A stretch of 64,000 nucleotides of DNA, from the NCBI GenBank assembly GCA_976226885.1, contig OZ320314.1, positions 111,662,001 through 111,726,000 on the forward strand, in the 5' to 3' direction. This stretch comes from Iphione sp. A-MEVVRFRX5 (taxonomy: Eukaryota). Numbering within the stretch: the stretch's first letter is position 1; every line of letters begins with the position of its first letter. The notes under the pieces are model-generated. The model was not told where the DNA came from and did not search any database. It saw only the letters and a list, made by a program, of their open reading frames with translations. The translations under genes and the position numbers were made by a program. Shown in pieces: positions 10,365 to 59,560 of this stretch.

Positions 10365-10470
10365 TTAAAAGTGATTCCTTGTATTTCTGGATTAAACACT
10401 TGTATTTTAATAAAGACAGAACTATTTTCATTTACATGATATGTTGCCTCTGAGAGCTGGAGTAGTGGAT
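10365..10470 (-). CDS. Exon Z1a (first half of domain Z): DPLLQLSEATYHVNENSSVFIKIQVFNPEIQGITFN
   Basis: tttgttgcag acceptor, gtaagt donor, 106 nt, phase 1-2; one codon shorter than the other Z1 exons. Confidence 0.85.
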
Positions 10471-10696
10471 CTGCAACAAAAAATAATTTCAATATGGTTT
10501 TATAATATTTATCATGATACTCTTTCTATTACATAAAACAGAGTCAAATATAGCAAATTAGAGGATACATTCTCTCAGAAGCATTACAGAACCTTCTTTA
10601 CATTCTGAAAGGAAACATTCAAACAAAGTGTTTACACTGACTAATGAATATAGCCATCAATTAACTAAAAAGGCCAAATCATAAAATGATACTCAC

Positions 10697-10923
10697 CATT
10701 ATCCTGGATCAATACTTCTAATGAAGCAGTGTTGAAAATGACATTGGAAATATTACATCTTGCAGTTATATTGAATGTTTCTCTAAGTTCTGCTGTTTGA
10801 TCATCAGTAACATTGAAAGAAAATGGAAACTGACTTCCATTTGAGCTACCGGCTACTATTGTAATATCATAGTCATTCAATAAAACATCAGAGTTGGTTG
10901 TATCTCCATGTACAAGTGTAAGA
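10697..10923 (-). CDS. Exon Y2a (second half of domain Y)
   Basis: tttttcgtag acceptor, gtgagt donor, 227 nt, phase 2-1; GSQFPFSFNVTDD...IQDN. Confidence 0.9.
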
Positions 10924-11149
10924 CTACGAAAAATAGAAAAAATAATTGAAATCAATCAACTAATCGAACCAATACCATGAAATACAATTTATCTATATTA
11001 CTTAGATATTTAAGTAAAACAAAAGAGAAATGACCAAATTACTGGCTAAATAATACATGTTATTGTAACCTACATAAGTAATGAAAAGATGCCAATCTTA
11101 TCATCTATAATAAAAGATAAATAATTCAGAAACTAAATAAATTCCTTGC

Positions 11150-11264
11150 CTTATATCAATGCTTGAGTCAATTCCTCCAGCTGGTACATTACTGATTTCA
11201 AGTGTTCCATTTTCTTGTGAACCTTCCACTGTAGTCAGAATCTTTGGTTCAAAATCAACAGTAA
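11150..11264 (-). CDS. Exon Y1a (first half of domain Y), GC donor
   Basis: tttcag acceptor, AG/gcaagg donor, 115 nt, phase 1-2; ITVDFEPKILTTVEG...IDIS. Confidence 0.8.
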
Positions 11265-11867
11265 CTGAAACCATAAATATGTTAGTGAAGCAATGTAAAA
11301 CTATTGAAATTTGTGTAATAAATCCAATACTCAGATAGAATTGTAATTTTCCACTGGGGAATCTTACTATATTTTATGATACATTTTTCAAAAAGGTTAT
11401 AGACTACTGTAATTGAAGTTTTACCCTATAATTAATGGATTAATGAATGGATTTAATATGAAAACTGAAACTTAAGAAATTACTATTTACATCCTAGAGC
11501 TTTAAGAATTACACATGTGCTTTAGTGAAATAATGATACAAAGACAGAACAAGTGAGTATTCTTGCACCTTGTTATATATTTAGACCAAGGAATTTATGA
11601 TATATTTGTGGGAATGATTGATAGGTGACTGACTTAGACTAAATATATATTTTCAATTTAAGTTACATTTGACAAAATAAATAGAGACGAACAAAATATG
11701 AATGAAGAATGAACTCTCACTTTCATTTCATACATCTCATTCCATATTGTTAATCTTGACAAAAGAATTCCTCCTATCATAATTTAGGTAATCAAATGCA
11801 GCACACATATTCTTACTTAAATACTATGTACTTAGTATATATTCTAAGAAGAAAAGATAATACTCAC

Positions 11868-12076
11868 TGTACTCATTATCTTGAATAATAACTTCAGTAG
11901 ATACAGTATTGGTCAAGAAGAATCCATTGAATTGTATAAAAAACATTTCATCTGGATCAAATATATCATCATCAATGATATTTATCTGGACACAACCTCC
12001 AGAGGCATTTACAGAAATAGCAGAATTGCCTGTGAAGTCTGATCCCAGAGTATCATTACTCTCAGGATAAGTGATG
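11868..12076 (-). CDS. Exon X2a (second half of domain X)
   Basis: ttttttcag acceptor, gtgagt donor, 209 nt, phase 2-1; GGCVQINIIDDDIFDPDEMF...IQDNEY. Confidence 0.9.
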
Positions 12077-56377: not shown

Positions 56378-57431
56378 TCAGAGACACTTTACAGTGTGAT
56401 AGGTGGTGAAACACCCTGGCAGGCATAAGTGAACACCACACTCTCTACACCCATACATTGTTTGACATTTGGTTGCCTGACACCCAATCACATGACACTT
56501 ATAGCAAATCCTGCAGAAACTCTTGTTGACTAAATCAGCAGGAGAGCACCTGTTAGTTAACGGCCTCTCATCTGTTTTTGCCAGATTCATTATCCTTTGC
56601 TGTTCTAAACACACTTGAAGAGCATGCTTAATGGATAGATGACGGAACATGGATTAACCTTTTATCTTTCCACAGGGATAGGATGAGATGAGCTTTACAT
56701 GCAAAATACATTGATCCCATAGCTGTCACGAATGATACCTTCTTTTTCATGAGATTTTTTGGAGGCCTGCGTGATTCAGCCTCACAGTTCCACAAAAGAA
56801 TGTGAAGAACTGAATCAATCTTTGGAACAATGGTATGCTTGAAAAATGATTATCTATATATGTACGATAATTTTGCTCTATTGTCCACCATGGTTCTTCC
56901 CTCCCTCTATCTTAGCCCTGCTGCTCACACTGTCCACAATTCTGCTGATGAACTCAGTAGACAGGAAGAGCCGATAGAAATCAAACAGTGTTTTTGTCTT
57001 TTCCAAATTGACTTCATCAGCTAGGCCTGTTTTCTCATTGAAATCATTCTTGAGCATCTTCTGATGGAGTCCTCTTGTGCTCTATCTACCTGCCATTATT
57101 GATGTTCTTAGCTTCGTCGGTGAGATCATCCAGAGACATATCGTCATCAAAGATGGCTGGGTCTTCATTCACTTTCATTGCTGCTGTTCTCCCATTCCGA
57201 ATCATCTTTGTTGGCATTATTAAGCAGCTTATAAGTCCAGCTCATCCTCTGAATCTGACTGGACATCCGAGAATTCCTCGTCTGATGCCATTTTCAATAG
57301 GCCAACACACCTAGTTCAAATGTTGTTGGCTGCCTCAGCAGGGCTGGGCAGGGAAAGCAGTGCAGAAAGCACATCATTCGAAAATGTCATGACTTGGATT
57401 GCTATGGAATTCATAGTTCCTCCCAAACCAT
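56378..57431 (-). mobile_element. piggyBac transposase remnant, internally deleted
   Basis: Acidic N-terminus MASDEEFSDVQSDSEDELD from ATG at 57291; WKDKRLIHVPSSIH (the piggyBac W.D.R.V..LS..H motif); C-terminal CRICY...YGCRECGVHLCLPGCFTTYH domain. TIRs and TTAA not found. Confidence 0.85.
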
Positions 57432-57776
57432 CTAAAACAATACATATTTATCTATTTTTTATCAAAATTATTAATTTACTTATATTATTTCTATATTAAA
57501 TCGTTATGCAAAAAATAATAGTCTATTTAATGCCTCAAGACTTCATTGGCACCCTGATAATATATATTGATGTAAAGAATAAATGGTTTTCAATATTAAA
57601 ATATGCAGGAGTGCTACAGGATAGCTGGTTTTGTTAGCAATAAAATGGATACCTCCTCACCTCTACTTAAATATCCTGGTAATGTAGATAACTTGAATTT
57701 AAAGATATTATTCCAATAGTTAAATTTACGTTATAATCATCACTTTAATGAGACAAATTGATTTATAATTTTCTAG

Positions 57777-58003
57777 TCTTGGACTTCTCCATGGAGAAAC
57801 AGACAATACTGATGTCTTCTTAAATGATCACAGTGTCACAATAATGTCTGGTAGTTTAACTGGCAGTCAGTTTCCATTTTCTTTCAATGTCACTGATGAT
57901 CAAACAGTGGAATTTGGAGAAACATTCAATATAACTGCAAGAAGTAATATTTCAAATGTCATTTTCAATGCTGTTCCATTAATAGTGTCAATCCAGGATA
58001 ATG
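57777..58003 (+). CDS. Exon Y2d, intact but inverted
   Basis: ttttctag acceptor, gtgagt donor, 227 nt, open; LGLLHGETDN...GSQFPFSFNVTDD...IQDN. Confidence 0.82.
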
Positions 58004-58030
58004 GTGAGTATTTATCTTTGACTTGGCCTT

Positions 58031-58997
58031 CCCAGCCAACACAAAAATTTTCAAATATTCAAAAACTGAGAGTATGCAATAATGTTTTCTTATCTAGATT
58101 AGAAAACATTTTTTGAAATGTTTGTAGCACAATTTTGAAAAACATTTCTTAGAATTTTGTATAAAAAGTGTCAACAGGTCTGGACAGGGTTTGAACCTGG
58201 ATCTTCCACATGTCAGTCTCCACACATTGTCCATGCATGTAGAGGCCGGTACTTTTACCCACAGGGCCACAGGAGCTAGGCAAAATTCATTCATTGCAGG
58301 GTTAAAGCTGTACTGTGGTTAGGGCTTTCACTACATTTACTTTATTTAATTATACTTTCATCCAGTGTATTAATGGGGGGCAGGTCTTCACAGCTTCCCT
58401 ATTTCTTTGCCATATTTTCAGGAATTGCAAGCATGTTTAGCATGACCTCCAAAAATAATTTTTTTCTTACAAATTCAGTGCCACTTTAGAGGAACCTCCA
58501 GTAATATATGCCACTCTTCATAATTTAAACAGATCTTCAGAATAGCTTGCAAAAGTATTTTTCCCATTCATTTTTAAAAATTTTAACCATGTCTGCCTAA
58601 AATATCATATAAAGTAAGTTGTGCATTATTCTTCGTAGTCTGTCCTCCTGTCACATTTAGTAGTTCCCACACTTTGTCAGGTGCTCCCCCCTCTCTTTGA
58701 CATCCTCCTGTCACCCTCAGAAGTCGCTATACTTTGCCAGGTACTTCCTGTGCTTTTGCTGTCCTCCTGCCACTTTTGGAAGCCCCAACACTTCATCAGG
58801 TACCCCCCTGCCTTGGTTACCTCCTGTTGCCCTCAGAAGTCTCTACACTTTATCAGGTGCTCCCCCAGCCTTGACCAATCTCCTGTCACTAAAATTTTCT
58901 TATATTTATATATTTTCTAATATTTAAAGTGCTTGCAGACGTTAATACCAAATGAAAACATTAAAAAACATTCTGAAAGCATTCTGTGCTGGCTGGG
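58031..58997. mobile_element. Complete 967-bp CCC...GGG non-autonomous DNA element with a tRNA-like head (58177-58276, minus strand) and tandem repeats
   Basis: TIRs CCCAGCCAACAC and CCCAGCCAGCAC, TT TSD; A box TGGCCCTGTGGGTAA, B box GGTTCAAACCC. Confidence 0.75.
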
Positions 58998-59451
58998 TTT
59001 TTACTTAATCTCTGGATATATGCATTACTCAACAAAAACACTTTATATAAATATTTGCATTCAGTCTATGTTAGTTTATAATATAGCTCCATATCATAAT
59101 GTAAAAACGAAGGTTCTATAACATACTGTAGAACGTAATCTTATGCATAAAAAGCATCTGCATCTGAGAGAATGTATGCCCTAGTTTGTTATATTTGACC
59201 ATGATTTATTTGATAGAAATAGTACCATGGTGAATCTGTACCAATAGAGTAGCAACTCACCAATGCCACCACCTAAGGGACAGTATGAAACTGCCCACCA
59301 CTGTTGGTGTTACATTTTTGAATGCATTCTGTATACTAAAGTTATGCAAAACTATTTACTACTGTAGAATGCCCCCTCAGTGGAGATGCCTGTAAAGTGA
59401 CATGCCACTGTATTACAAAACCATACTGAAGCTACATTCTTCTTCCTCCAG

Positions 59452-59560
59452 ATCCACTACTCCAGTTGTCAGGGCCATCATATGATGTGAATGAAAATGA
59501 TAGTTCTGTCATTATACAAGTACAAGTGCTAAATACACAAATAGAAGGAGTCACTTTCAA
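59452..59560 (+). CDS. Exon Z1d, intact but inverted: DPLLQLSGPSYDVNENDSSVIIQVQVLNTQIEGVTF
   Basis: ttcttcttcctccag acceptor, gtgagt donor, 109 nt, open. Confidence 0.82.

What the first reader, a model, noticed from the sequence alone, without database searches (positions are those of the whole stretch)
10365..59560. Tandem array of Calx-beta half-domain exons with strict phase 1/2 alternation: a possible combinatorial surface-protein system
Seen: 20 open exons in a repeating X1-X2-Y1-Y2-Z1-Z2 unit. Every first-half exon is phase 1-2 and every second-half exon is phase 2-1, and all junction codons are sensible (AA+C/T=Asn, AG+T=Ser, G+AT=Asp, G+AG=Glu, A+TT=Ile). There are no stops or frameshifts even though transposons fill most of the intron space. 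Any first half can therefore splice in frame to any downstream second half, and whole domains can be skipped. Known: multi-Calx-beta extracellular proteins include ADGRV1, FRAS1/FREM and the polymorphic sponge aggregation factors. Inference: a rapidly remodelling adhesion or self-recognition gene able to make chimeric domains by splicing or unequal crossover.
Basis: partly seen in the sequence, partly recalled or inferred. Interest (0 to 1): 0.8.

Follow-up and report, generated by a model that had tools for sequence, protein, structure and literature searches.

The report
Tandemly amplified Calx-beta repeat gene fragment
This is the middle of a large animal gene for an acidic, probably sugar-coated extracellular Calx-beta repeat protein, in which a block of three domains (six exons) was copied three to four times; the matching intron phases are inherited from that copying and do not show a combinatorial splicing system.

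Summary
There are six exon types. Three are first halves of 103-115 nt with phase 1-2. Three are second halves of 209-227 nt with phase 2-1. One unit is 987 nt, or 329 aa.

One correction matters. Only 17 exons lie on the minus strand. Exons g3, b4 and a4 sit in two locally inverted blocks on the plus strand, so the collinear in-frame run is 16 exons (876 aa).

Taken exon by exon, the pieces match complementary halves of the Calx-beta domain. No relative closer than generic (about 30-40% identity) multi-Calx-beta proteins was found among 1.84 billion proteins.

The copies share intron sequence and even a transposon, so they are recent segmental duplicates. They show purifying selection (pN/pS 0.3-0.45) and patchy identity between copies (50-99%).

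Best reading: an ordinary intragenic amplification of a three-domain cassette with phase-1 boundaries on both sides. Unequal-crossover remodelling is supported. Combinatorial half-domain splicing is unsupported and cannot be tested here. The organism is unknown; it is not human.

The parts
55714..55940 (-). e3, second-half exon (phase 2-1). It is the most upstream minus-strand exon in the window.
   Evidence: Pfam Calx-beta positions 67-119, E=0.005.
45425..45633 (-). d3, second-half exon. Its cognate first half (g3) is inverted, so e3 to d3 is out of frame.
   Evidence: Pfam Calx-beta 73-118, E=9e-4.
44668..44782 (-). c3, first-half exon with a GC donor.
44170..44396 (-). b3, second-half exon.
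43742..43850 (-). a3, first-half exon.
   Evidence: Pfam Calx-beta 7-37, E=0.018.
39871..40094 (-). e2, second-half exon.
35606..35708 (-). g2, first-half exon.
21674..21882 (-). d2, second-half exon.
20753..20867 (-). c2, first-half exon with a GC donor.
20252..20478 (-). b2, second-half exon.
19828..19936 (-). a2, first-half exon.
17732..17955 (-). e1, second-half exon. It gives the best single-exon match to Calx-beta.
   Evidence: Pfam PF03160 positions 54-119, E=2.5e-5, 24.7 bits against a cut-off of 27.
14049..14151 (-). g1, first-half exon.
11868..12076 (-). d1, second-half exon.
   Evidence: Pfam Calx-beta 73-117, E=1e-3.
11150..11264 (-). c1, first-half exon with a GC donor.
10697..10923 (-). 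b1, second-half exon.
10365..10470 (-). a1, first-half exon. It is the last exon in the window and no partner second half lies downstream within the window.
52948..53050 (+). g3, an intact first-half exon on the opposite strand, inside inverted block 52302-53638.
57777..58003 (+). b4, an intact second-half exon on the opposite strand, inside inverted block 57557-59896.
59452..59560 (+). a4, an intact first-half exon on the opposite strand, in the same inverted block.
22017..33705 (.). 11.7-kb nested transposon insertion in intron g2 to d2, absent from unit A. It holds a 327-nt direct repeat pair at 22716-23042 and 33248-33574 (95% identical), an integrase ORF and a reverse-transcriptase ORF.
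35973..39660 (+). LTR-retrotransposon fragment (RNase H) in intron e2 to g2. It shares its position with the copy at 14963-17156 in unit A, so it was inserted before the A/B duplication.
49600..51900 (+). LINE-type element (endonuclease and reverse transcriptase) next to the first inversion breakpoint.
7146..7650 (-). Remnant of the intron that lies just 5' of an e exon. Homology stops at a GC-rich transposon, so the next e exon is displaced, probably beyond the window start.

Best explanation
The window holds an internal stretch of one large minus-strand gene for a secreted or cell-surface, calcium-binding, heavily N-glycosylated protein built from Calx-beta-type domains.

In the ancestor of the three domain types, each domain was already split by a phase-2 intron about 40% of the way in and was bounded by phase-1 introns. 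A cassette of three different domains was then duplicated in tandem, introns and a resident retrotransposon included. The cassette is a-e, g-d, c-b: six exons, 987 nt, 329 aa. It is now present at least three to four times.

The cassette begins and ends in phase 1, so unequal crossing-over can add or remove copies without breaking the frame. Gene conversion keeps parts of the copies similar.

The default expectation is collinear constitutive splicing, giving a longer rod of repeated domains. Two small inversions, or assembly errors, have put three exons of the upstream units on the wrong strand.

Shown: the exon anatomy, the phases, the duplication, the selection and the Calx-beta likeness. 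Inferred: extracellular location, calcium binding, collinear splicing and the crossover mechanism.
For: - Exon boundaries, phases and junction codons.
- The three domain types are only 22-25% identical to each other but share exon boundaries in the alignment. Copies of one type are 65-97% identical.
- Units share intron sequence at 70-95% identity and an LTR-element fragment at the same intron position.
- Exons are better conserved than their flanks and have no frameshifting indels. Pooled pN/pS is 0.32-0.43, and synonymous sites carry significantly more changes than non-synonymous sites (Fisher p = 5e-5, 6e-8 and 4e-4).
- Identity between units A and B runs from about 0.5-0.8 near exon a to 0.98-0.99 around exon g. 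That patchiness is the sign of sequence exchange.
- Calx-beta likeness:
  - Pfam hits of first-half and second-half exons fall on complementary parts of PF03160.
  - The second-half profile hits the Na/Ca-exchanger CBD structures at E=3.7e-4.
  - hhalign gives 95% for family a on domain columns 6-30 and 96.6% for the second halves on columns 50-116.
  - Exon e1 finds 3824 proteins, and the top ones carry many Calx-beta repeats.
- The 876-aa collinear translation has no stop. It is 15% Asp+Glu against 2% Lys+Arg, and has 35 sequons against 16.5 +/- 3.5 in shuffles.
Against: - No gene start, signal peptide, membrane anchor or gene end lies in the window, so location and overall architecture are inferred.
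- No single exon reaches Pfam's gathering score. Exon types c and g have no significant match on their own.
- The upstream part is disrupted. g3, b4 and a4 are inverted and e3 to d3 is out of frame.
- pN/pS of 0.3-0.5 is fairly relaxed.
- No transcript or relative from the same or a close species was found.
Confidence: 0.7

Rival explanations
1. One reading: the array is a combinatorial system. First halves are spliced to non-cognate downstream second halves, or whole domains are skipped, to produce many surface-protein isoforms for adhesion or self-recognition.
For: - Every first-to-second and second-to-first junction among same-strand exons is in frame and gives an ordinary codon.
- Every junction from an a or g first half to any second half gives Asn followed by x-S/T, so a sequon would be kept even in chimeras.
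- The product has the look of an extracellular glycoprotein.
Against: - Phase compatibility is fully explained by descent.
- The exons are interleaved by type. They are not clustered as alternatives.
- Halves of different types are only about 22-25% identical, so chimeric domains may not fold.
- Copies of one type differ little and show purifying selection, so little diversity would be gained.
- All splice sites look constitutive.
- Three exons are on the other strand.
- There are no transcript data.
Confidence: 0.07
2. The array is a decaying or already dead gene remnant. It was once a functional repeat gene and is now broken by transposon insertions and inversions and is no longer expressed.
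For: - Two inverted blocks remove g3, b4 and a4 from the minus-strand gene, and e3 to d3 is out of frame.
- The expected e exon after a1 is displaced by a transposon.
- Introns reach 13.7 kb because of nested elements.
- Constraint is relaxed.
Against: - All 20 exons, the inverted ones included, keep open frames and AG/GT(GC) sites.
- pN/pS is significantly below 1.
- The 16-exon run is open over 876 codons in 33% GC sequence, where I estimate from base composition that about 8% of random codons would be stops.
Confidence: 0.18
3. The inverted blocks, and perhaps the unit count, are assembly artefacts of a repeat-rich region. The true locus would be a fully collinear array.
For: - Both inversions are in place, so the blocks sit where they would be if not inverted. 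They abut transposons.
- The inverted exons are intact and show the same constraint as the others.
Against: - Units differ by 5-28%, which is far too much for collapsed or duplicated haplotypes.
- Nothing in the sequence marks a misjoin, and there are no N runs.
Confidence: 0.25

Closest known systems
Sponge aggregation factor genes (AqAFA-E of Amphimedon; MAFp3/p4 of Clathria). PMC5400394, PMC11670116
   Same: - Long runs of extracellular Calx-beta domains split over several exons.
- Intragenic repeats that include introns. AqAFC has three repeats of two Calx-beta domains at about 85% nucleotide identity.
- Heavy glycosylation of the Calx-beta arms.
- Copy number of domains varies between paralogues.
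   Different: - AF introns are all of one phase (phase 1 in Amphimedon and Xestospongia, phase 0 in Clathria), and a domain spans three exons (27+145+126 nt). Here phases alternate 1/2 and a domain is two exons (about 105-115 nt plus 209-227 nt).
- AF introns are about 100-400 nt. Here they are 0.2-13.7 kb and full of transposons.
- No Wreath domain, signal peptide or gene cluster is visible in the window.
- There is no sequence similarity beyond generic Calx-beta.
Vertebrate multi-Calx-beta proteins (ADGRV1/VLGR1; FRAS1/FREM family) and sea-urchin ECM3
   Same: Extracellular tandem Calx-beta domains with the acidic D-D-x-x-x-E-x-x-E-x-F type motif in the second half.
   Different: - No 7TM, GAIN, EPTP or CSPG-repeat exons lie in the window.
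- The only Cadherin_3 (CSPG) signal is a chance-level hit in exon b (E=0.04).
- No hit in the big search exceeds about 40% identity.
Calx-beta domains CBD1/CBD2 of Na/Ca exchangers (for example PDB 3e9t, 3ead, 2fws, 2dpk)
   Same: These are the only solved structures matched. The second-half exon profile aligns to the C-terminal half, including the acidic motif.
   Different: Those are two cytoplasmic regulatory domains in a membrane transporter. Here there are many tandem domains, rich in sequons, presumably extracellular.
Super-repeat genes expanded by in-frame exon-block duplication (titin and nebulin type; own knowledge)
   Same: A block of several different domains is the unit of tandem duplication, and the phase-symmetric block boundaries keep the frame.
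   Different: Different domain family. Here each domain is further split by an internal phase-2 intron.

Membership tests
Calx-beta domain (Pfam PF03160) | Sequence match to the family model at or above the gathering score (27 bits) | tested here: inconclusive
Tested exon by exon only. e1 scores 24.7 bits (profile 54-119), d1/d3 19.6-19.7 bits (73-118), a3 15.5 bits (7-37). b, c and g give no hit. The halves match complementary parts of the model.
Calx-beta domain (Pfam PF03160) | Acidic motif of the D-D-x-x-x-E-x-x-E-x-F type in the second half, and a hydrophobic-x-F ... V-x-E start in the first half | tested here: met
   The alignment of all ten second halves has invariant D38, E45 and F47 within such a motif. 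The first halves share an invariant Glu at position 14.
Calx-beta domain (Pfam PF03160) | Profile-profile similarity to bona fide Calx-beta domains over the right part of the domain | tested here: met
   hhalign against 12 domains taken from multi-Calx-beta hits: family a on columns 6-30 at 95%; second halves on columns 50-116 at 96.6%. Families c and g are not significant on their own.
Calx-beta domain (Pfam PF03160) | Ig-like beta-sandwich fold of about 100 residues | not tested
   A fold prediction needs the spliced domain, which has no reference. That step was left out.
Sponge aggregation factor (AF) gene family | All introns in one phase, so that every exon is phase-symmetric | tested here: not met
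   Introns alternate phase 1 and phase 2. AFs are 154/155 phase 1 in Amphimedon and all phase 0 in Clathria (PMC5400394).
Sponge aggregation factor (AF) gene family | Calx-beta domain spread over three exons (about 27+145+126 nt) | tested here: not met
   Here there are two exons per domain: 103-115 nt and 209-227 nt.
Sponge aggregation factor (AF) gene family | C-terminal Wreath domain and N-terminal signal peptide | not testable with these tools
   The gene ends lie outside the window, and no Wreath model is in the libraries offered.
FRAS1/FREM family | CSPG (Cadherin_3) repeats preceding the Calx-beta run | tested here: inconclusive
   There is only a sub-threshold Cadherin_3 hit inside exon b (E=0.04-0.07, 14 bits against 25.5). 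No such exon is found elsewhere in the window. The rest of the gene is not in view.
Mutually exclusive or combinatorial exon arrays (Dscam type; own knowledge) | A cluster of adjacent alternative exons of one type, one chosen per transcript | tested here: not met
   Exons of six different types are interleaved in the fixed order a-e-g-d-c-b. Same-type copies are 9-24 kb apart.
Mutually exclusive or combinatorial exon arrays (Dscam type; own knowledge) | Transcripts that show alternative junctions | not testable with these tools
   No transcript data are available. No protein or contig of this organism was found.

The most novel reading that the evidence does not exclude
The locus could be part of a lineage-specific recognition or adhesion gene. 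In that reading, copy number of the cassette, gene conversion and in-frame joining of non-cognate half-domain exons together generate individual-specific variants of a hyper-glycosylated Calx-beta rod. It would be an analogue of sponge aggregation factors built on a different exon logic (alternating phase 1/2, with the sequon Asn encoded across the internal intron).
Probability: 0.07. Interest if true: 0.75.

Novelty: new member of a known kind. Interest (0 to 1): 0.3.

Why it matters
If the main reading holds, this is a clean and ordinary example of how long repeat proteins grow. A phase-symmetric block of several domains is copied in tandem and kept in frame, and transposons swell the introns. 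It adds an unannotated and sequence-wise isolated Calx-beta repeat gene from an unsampled animal lineage.

It would matter more only if transcripts or population data showed chimeric domains or variable unit number. That would give a second, independently built Calx-beta diversity system beside the sponge aggregation factors.

Tried and rejected
- Word search with exon e1 found no candidate.
- The full-library search with e1 gave only generic multi-Calx-beta proteins. The best single-domain scores were about 35 bits, and those of these hits that carry a species name are cyanobacterial.
- Exact look-ups of three window ORFs found nothing on record.
- A degenerate DNA pattern from exon d found nothing in metagenome contigs.
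- The organism was not identified. The reverse-transcriptase ORF has no hit above about 40% identity over its full length; the named hits are sea cucumbers and spiders.
- Rfam found nothing in the window.
- I first took an ORF conserved in the g-to-d intron (12583-12738) for the missing first-half exon. I rejected it because the third copy has a frameshift. The real g exon came from a phase-constrained splice-site scan.
- Sponge aggregation factor membership was rejected on intron phase and exon layout.
- Left out under the operators' rule: any search or fold with the joined (spliced) 329-aa unit or a joined domain. Everything was searched exon by exon, by reference. Conceptual joining was done only inside scripts, to read junction codons, frame and composition.
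- The window has no N runs.
- I do not take the window for human, because it carries long open ORFs of a Gypsy-type retroelement and has no close relative of any kind. No human sequence was fetched.
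Full report
WHAT IS THERE

The window is AT-rich eukaryotic DNA (28-35% GC) broken up by GC-rich blocks of 50-66% GC. It has no N runs.

A self-comparison shows a long repeat unit present three times in direct order. Unit A lies at about 10.0-18.8 kb. 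Unit B lies at 19.3-41.7 kb and carries an extra 11.7 kb at 22017-33705. Unit C lies from 43.2 kb onward. Further pieces of a unit lie at 52.3-59.9 kb, partly in inverted orientation.

Open frames conserved between the units lie on the minus strand.

Aligning the copies with their flanks gives conserved acceptor and donor sites. The sixth exon type (g) was not obvious. I found it by scanning the e-to-d interval for open segments with the required phases and AG/GT sites and confirmed it in three copies.

THE EXONS

- First halves:
  - a: 106-109 nt, 4 copies.
  - c: 115 nt, 3 copies.
  - g: 103 nt, 3 copies.
- Second halves:
  - e: 224-227 nt, 3 copies.
  - d: 209 nt, 3 copies.
  - b: 227 nt, 4 copies.

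That is 20 exons and 3297 nt, which is 6.7% of 10365-59560.

In gene order (descending coordinates) the unit is a-e, g-d, c-b, totalling 987 nt = 329 aa.

First halves start with 2 nt and end with 2 nt of split codons. Second halves start and end with 1 nt. The junction codons are AAT Asn (a-e), GAG Glu (e-g), AAC Asn (g-d), ATT Ile (d-c), AGT Ser (c-b) and GAT Asp (b-a).

All sites are AG...GT, except that all three c exons use a GC donor (AAG|GCAAG).

Profiles built from the ten first halves and the ten second halves find these 20 segments among all six-frame open pieces of the window, and nothing else above noise.

THE CORRECTION

Seventeen exons are on the minus strand. g3 (52948-53050), b4 (57777-58003) and a4 (59452-59560) are on the plus strand.

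They lie in two blocks, 52302-53638 and 57557-59896. Each block matches the other units in reverse orientation yet sits where it would be if it were not inverted. Exon e3, which lies between the blocks, is in the normal orientation.

As assembled, the minus-strand gene therefore lacks a g exon after e3, and e3 to d3 is out of frame. e3 to c3 would be in frame.

The strictly collinear run is d3-c3-b3-a3-e2-g2-d2-c2-b2-a2-e1-g1-d1-c1-b1-a1. That is 16 exons and 2631 nt, with 876 codons and no stop.

Whether the inversions are real or are assembly errors cannot be told from the sequence.

MORE THAN CHANCE, AND UNDER SELECTION

- At 33% GC I estimate from base composition that about 8% of random codons would be stops, so ten open 70-75-codon exons are not chance.
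- Between copies the exons are 81-99% identical. The 150-nt flanks are 50-99% identical, lower than the exon in nearly every pair and usually gapped.
- No exon has a frameshifting indel.
- Pooled over exons, pS/pN is 0.131/0.047 for A-B, 0.198/0.064 for A-C and 0.130/0.056 for B-C. The pN/pS ratios are 0.32-0.43.
- The excess of synonymous change is significant (Fisher p = 5e-5, 6e-8 and 4e-4).
- The three inverted exons show the same pattern (ratios 0.3-0.5 against the other copies).

The copies have therefore been translated sequence for most of their history.

WHAT THE EXONS ENCODE

No search or fold was done with a joined model.

- Pfam results:
  - e1 matches Calx-beta PF03160 positions 54-119 (E=2.5e-5, 24.7 bits against a cut-off of 27).
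  - d1 and d3 match positions 73-118 (E about 1e-3).
  - a3 matches positions 7-37 (E=0.018).
  - b, c and g give nothing.
- First and second halves fall on complementary parts of the model, with the internal intron at about model position 41-43.
- A profile of the ten second halves hits only Na/Ca-exchanger Calx-beta domains among solved structures (best E=3.7e-4). The match covers the acidic motif.
- I compared the exon families with an alignment of 12 domains cut from multi-Calx-beta hits:
  - Family a aligns to columns 6-30 (95%).
  - The second halves align to columns 50-116 (96.6%).
  - Families c and g are not significant alone.
- The ten second halves share invariant Asp, Glu and Phe in a D-D-x-x-x-E-x-x-E-x-F type motif.

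Domain a-e is thus well supported as Calx-beta and g-d is supported through d. For c-b the support is that b carries the motif in the alignment and that the exons sit in the matching positions of the unit.

RELATIVES

- The word search with e1 found nothing of similar length.
- The full-library search with e1 found 3824 proteins at E<=0.001. All of the top 150 are giant multi-repeat proteins at 26-40% identity.
- The best single-domain scores are about 35 bits. An identical domain would be expected to score far higher.
- Of these best-scoring hits, those that carry a species name are cyanobacterial.
- The gene therefore has no relative closer than generic Calx-beta in 1.84 billion representative proteins.
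- The organism itself seems to be absent from the collections:
  - A 460-aa protease/reverse-transcriptase ORF has no hit above about 40% identity over its full length; the named hits are sea cucumbers and spiders.
  - Three exact look-ups and a degenerate exon pattern in metagenome contigs found nothing.
- An interstitial (TTAGGG)9 run and the splice signals fit a non-arthropod, non-nematode animal. I cannot go further than that.
- I do not take the window for human.

HISTORY OF THE LOCUS

The three domain types are 22-25% identical to each other but have the same exon boundaries in the alignment. The phase-2 internal intron and the phase-1 boundaries therefore predate the divergence of the types.

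Copies of one type are 65-97% identical in protein. The units share intron sequence. Units A and B also share an LTR-element fragment at the same place in the e-to-g intron (14963-17156 and 35973-39401). The whole roughly 9-kb unit, transposon included, was therefore duplicated.

Later events are as follows:
- An 11.7-kb nested insertion in unit B, with a 95% identical 327-nt repeat pair.
- A LINE at 49.6-51.9 kb.
- A piggyBac-type remnant at about 56.4-57.1 kb. The transposase hit is sub-threshold at E=2.3e-4.

Identity between units A and B is patchy. It runs from about 0.5-0.8 near exon a to 0.98-0.99 over about 700 nt around exon g. I read this as gene conversion.

On the left, 7146-7650 matches the intron just 5' of an e exon, and the match stops at a GC-rich element. 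The array probably continues beyond both window ends.

THE PRODUCT

The 876-aa conceptual translation was used only inside a script. It is 15.3% Asp+Glu against 2.1% Lys+Arg. It carries 35 N-x-S/T sequons against 16.5 +/- 3.5 in composition-matched shuffles, and none of 2000 shuffles reaches 35.

The split Asn codons of the a-e and g-d junctions are each followed by x-S or x-T, so the internal intron sits inside a sequon.

This points to an extracellular, calcium-binding, heavily glycosylated rod. That reading is inferred, because no signal peptide or anchor is in view.

It is true that any same-strand first half can join any downstream second half in frame, and that a domain pair or a whole unit can be skipped. 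That property is inherited from one ancestral split domain and from copying the unit. It needs no special explanation.

These points speak against a combinatorial system:
- The exon types are interleaved, not clustered as alternatives.
- Halves of different types are only about a quarter identical.
- Copies of a type differ little and are under purifying selection.
- The splice sites look constitutive.
- Three exons are on the other strand.

Remodelling by unequal crossover and conversion is supported by the data.

COMPARISON WITH KNOWN SYSTEMS

The closest analogue is the sponge aggregation factor family. AqAFC has three intragenic repeats of two Calx-beta domains, introns included, at about 85% identity, and domain number varies among paralogues (PMC5400394).

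The exon logic differs, however. AF introns are all phase 1 (Amphimedon, Xestospongia) or all phase 0 (Clathria), a domain spans three exons, and phase 2 makes up only about 5% of introns in Amphimedon Calx-beta genes. I therefore do not file this locus as an AF.

FRAS1/FREM, ADGRV1 and ECM3 share only the domain type (PMC11670116).

VERDICT

This is a real, carefully observed structure.

It is best explained as ordinary intragenic amplification of a three-domain Calx-beta cassette in a large gene for an extracellular protein, from an unsampled animal. Interest is modest.

Noticed in passing
window 11145-11149, 20748-20752, 44663-44667 (minus strand, just 3' of exons c1-c3): All three c exons use a GC donor (AAG|GCAAG) rather than GT. 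A weak GT lies 18 nt downstream and would also be in frame.
   Followed up: partly
window 19145-19198: An interstitial telomere-type repeat, (GGTTAG)9 = (TTAGGG)n, lies in the a2-to-e1 intron. It is close to where homology between units B and C begins.
   Followed up: no
window 13711-14420 and about 35270-35980: A tract of about 700 nt around exon g is 98-99% identical between units A and B, while the rest of the units is 50-93% identical. This is probably a recent gene-conversion tract.
   Followed up: partly
window 22716-23042 and 33248-33574: A 327-nt direct repeat pair, 95% identical and 10.5 kb apart, lies inside the 11.7-kb insertion in intron g2-to-d2. It is probably a pair of LTRs of a fairly young retroelement. 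An integrase ORF (27013-28203, minus) and a reverse-transcriptase fragment on the other strand (29451-30443) are nested inside.
   Followed up: partly
window 21033-21320: A perfect (100%) tandem duplication of a 157-nt unit lies in intron d2-to-c2. It is very recent and accounts for most of the extra length of this intron compared with units A and C.
   Followed up: no
window 52948-53050, 57777-58003, 59452-59560 (plus strand): The three inverted exons are themselves mutually in frame on the plus strand. g3 to b4 gives AAT Asn, a non-cognate half-domain junction, and b4 to a4 gives GAT Asp.
   Followed up: partly
window 443-2107 (minus): An intact 554-aa ATG ORF with a CCHC zinc knuckle lies in the GC-rich element left of the array. 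It is gag-like and may belong to a still active retroelement. It is not on record in the gene index.
   Followed up: partly
window 41345-41662; also 18473-18798 and 58643-58902: A 58-nt (116-nt) minisatellite lies in the a-to-e introns of the units. Copy number differs between units.
   Followed up: no
window 56381-57100 (minus): Open pieces here resemble a piggyBac-type transposase. One piece hits DDE_Tnp_1_7 at E=2.3e-4, just under threshold, and by eye there is a Cys-rich tail. They lie between e3 and the second inverted block.
   Followed up: partly
junctions a-e and g-d in all units: The Asn codon split by the internal phase-2 intron is followed by L-S or I-T, so the intron lies inside an N-glycosylation sequon. 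Sequons are twice as frequent as composition predicts (35 against 16.5).
   Followed up: partly
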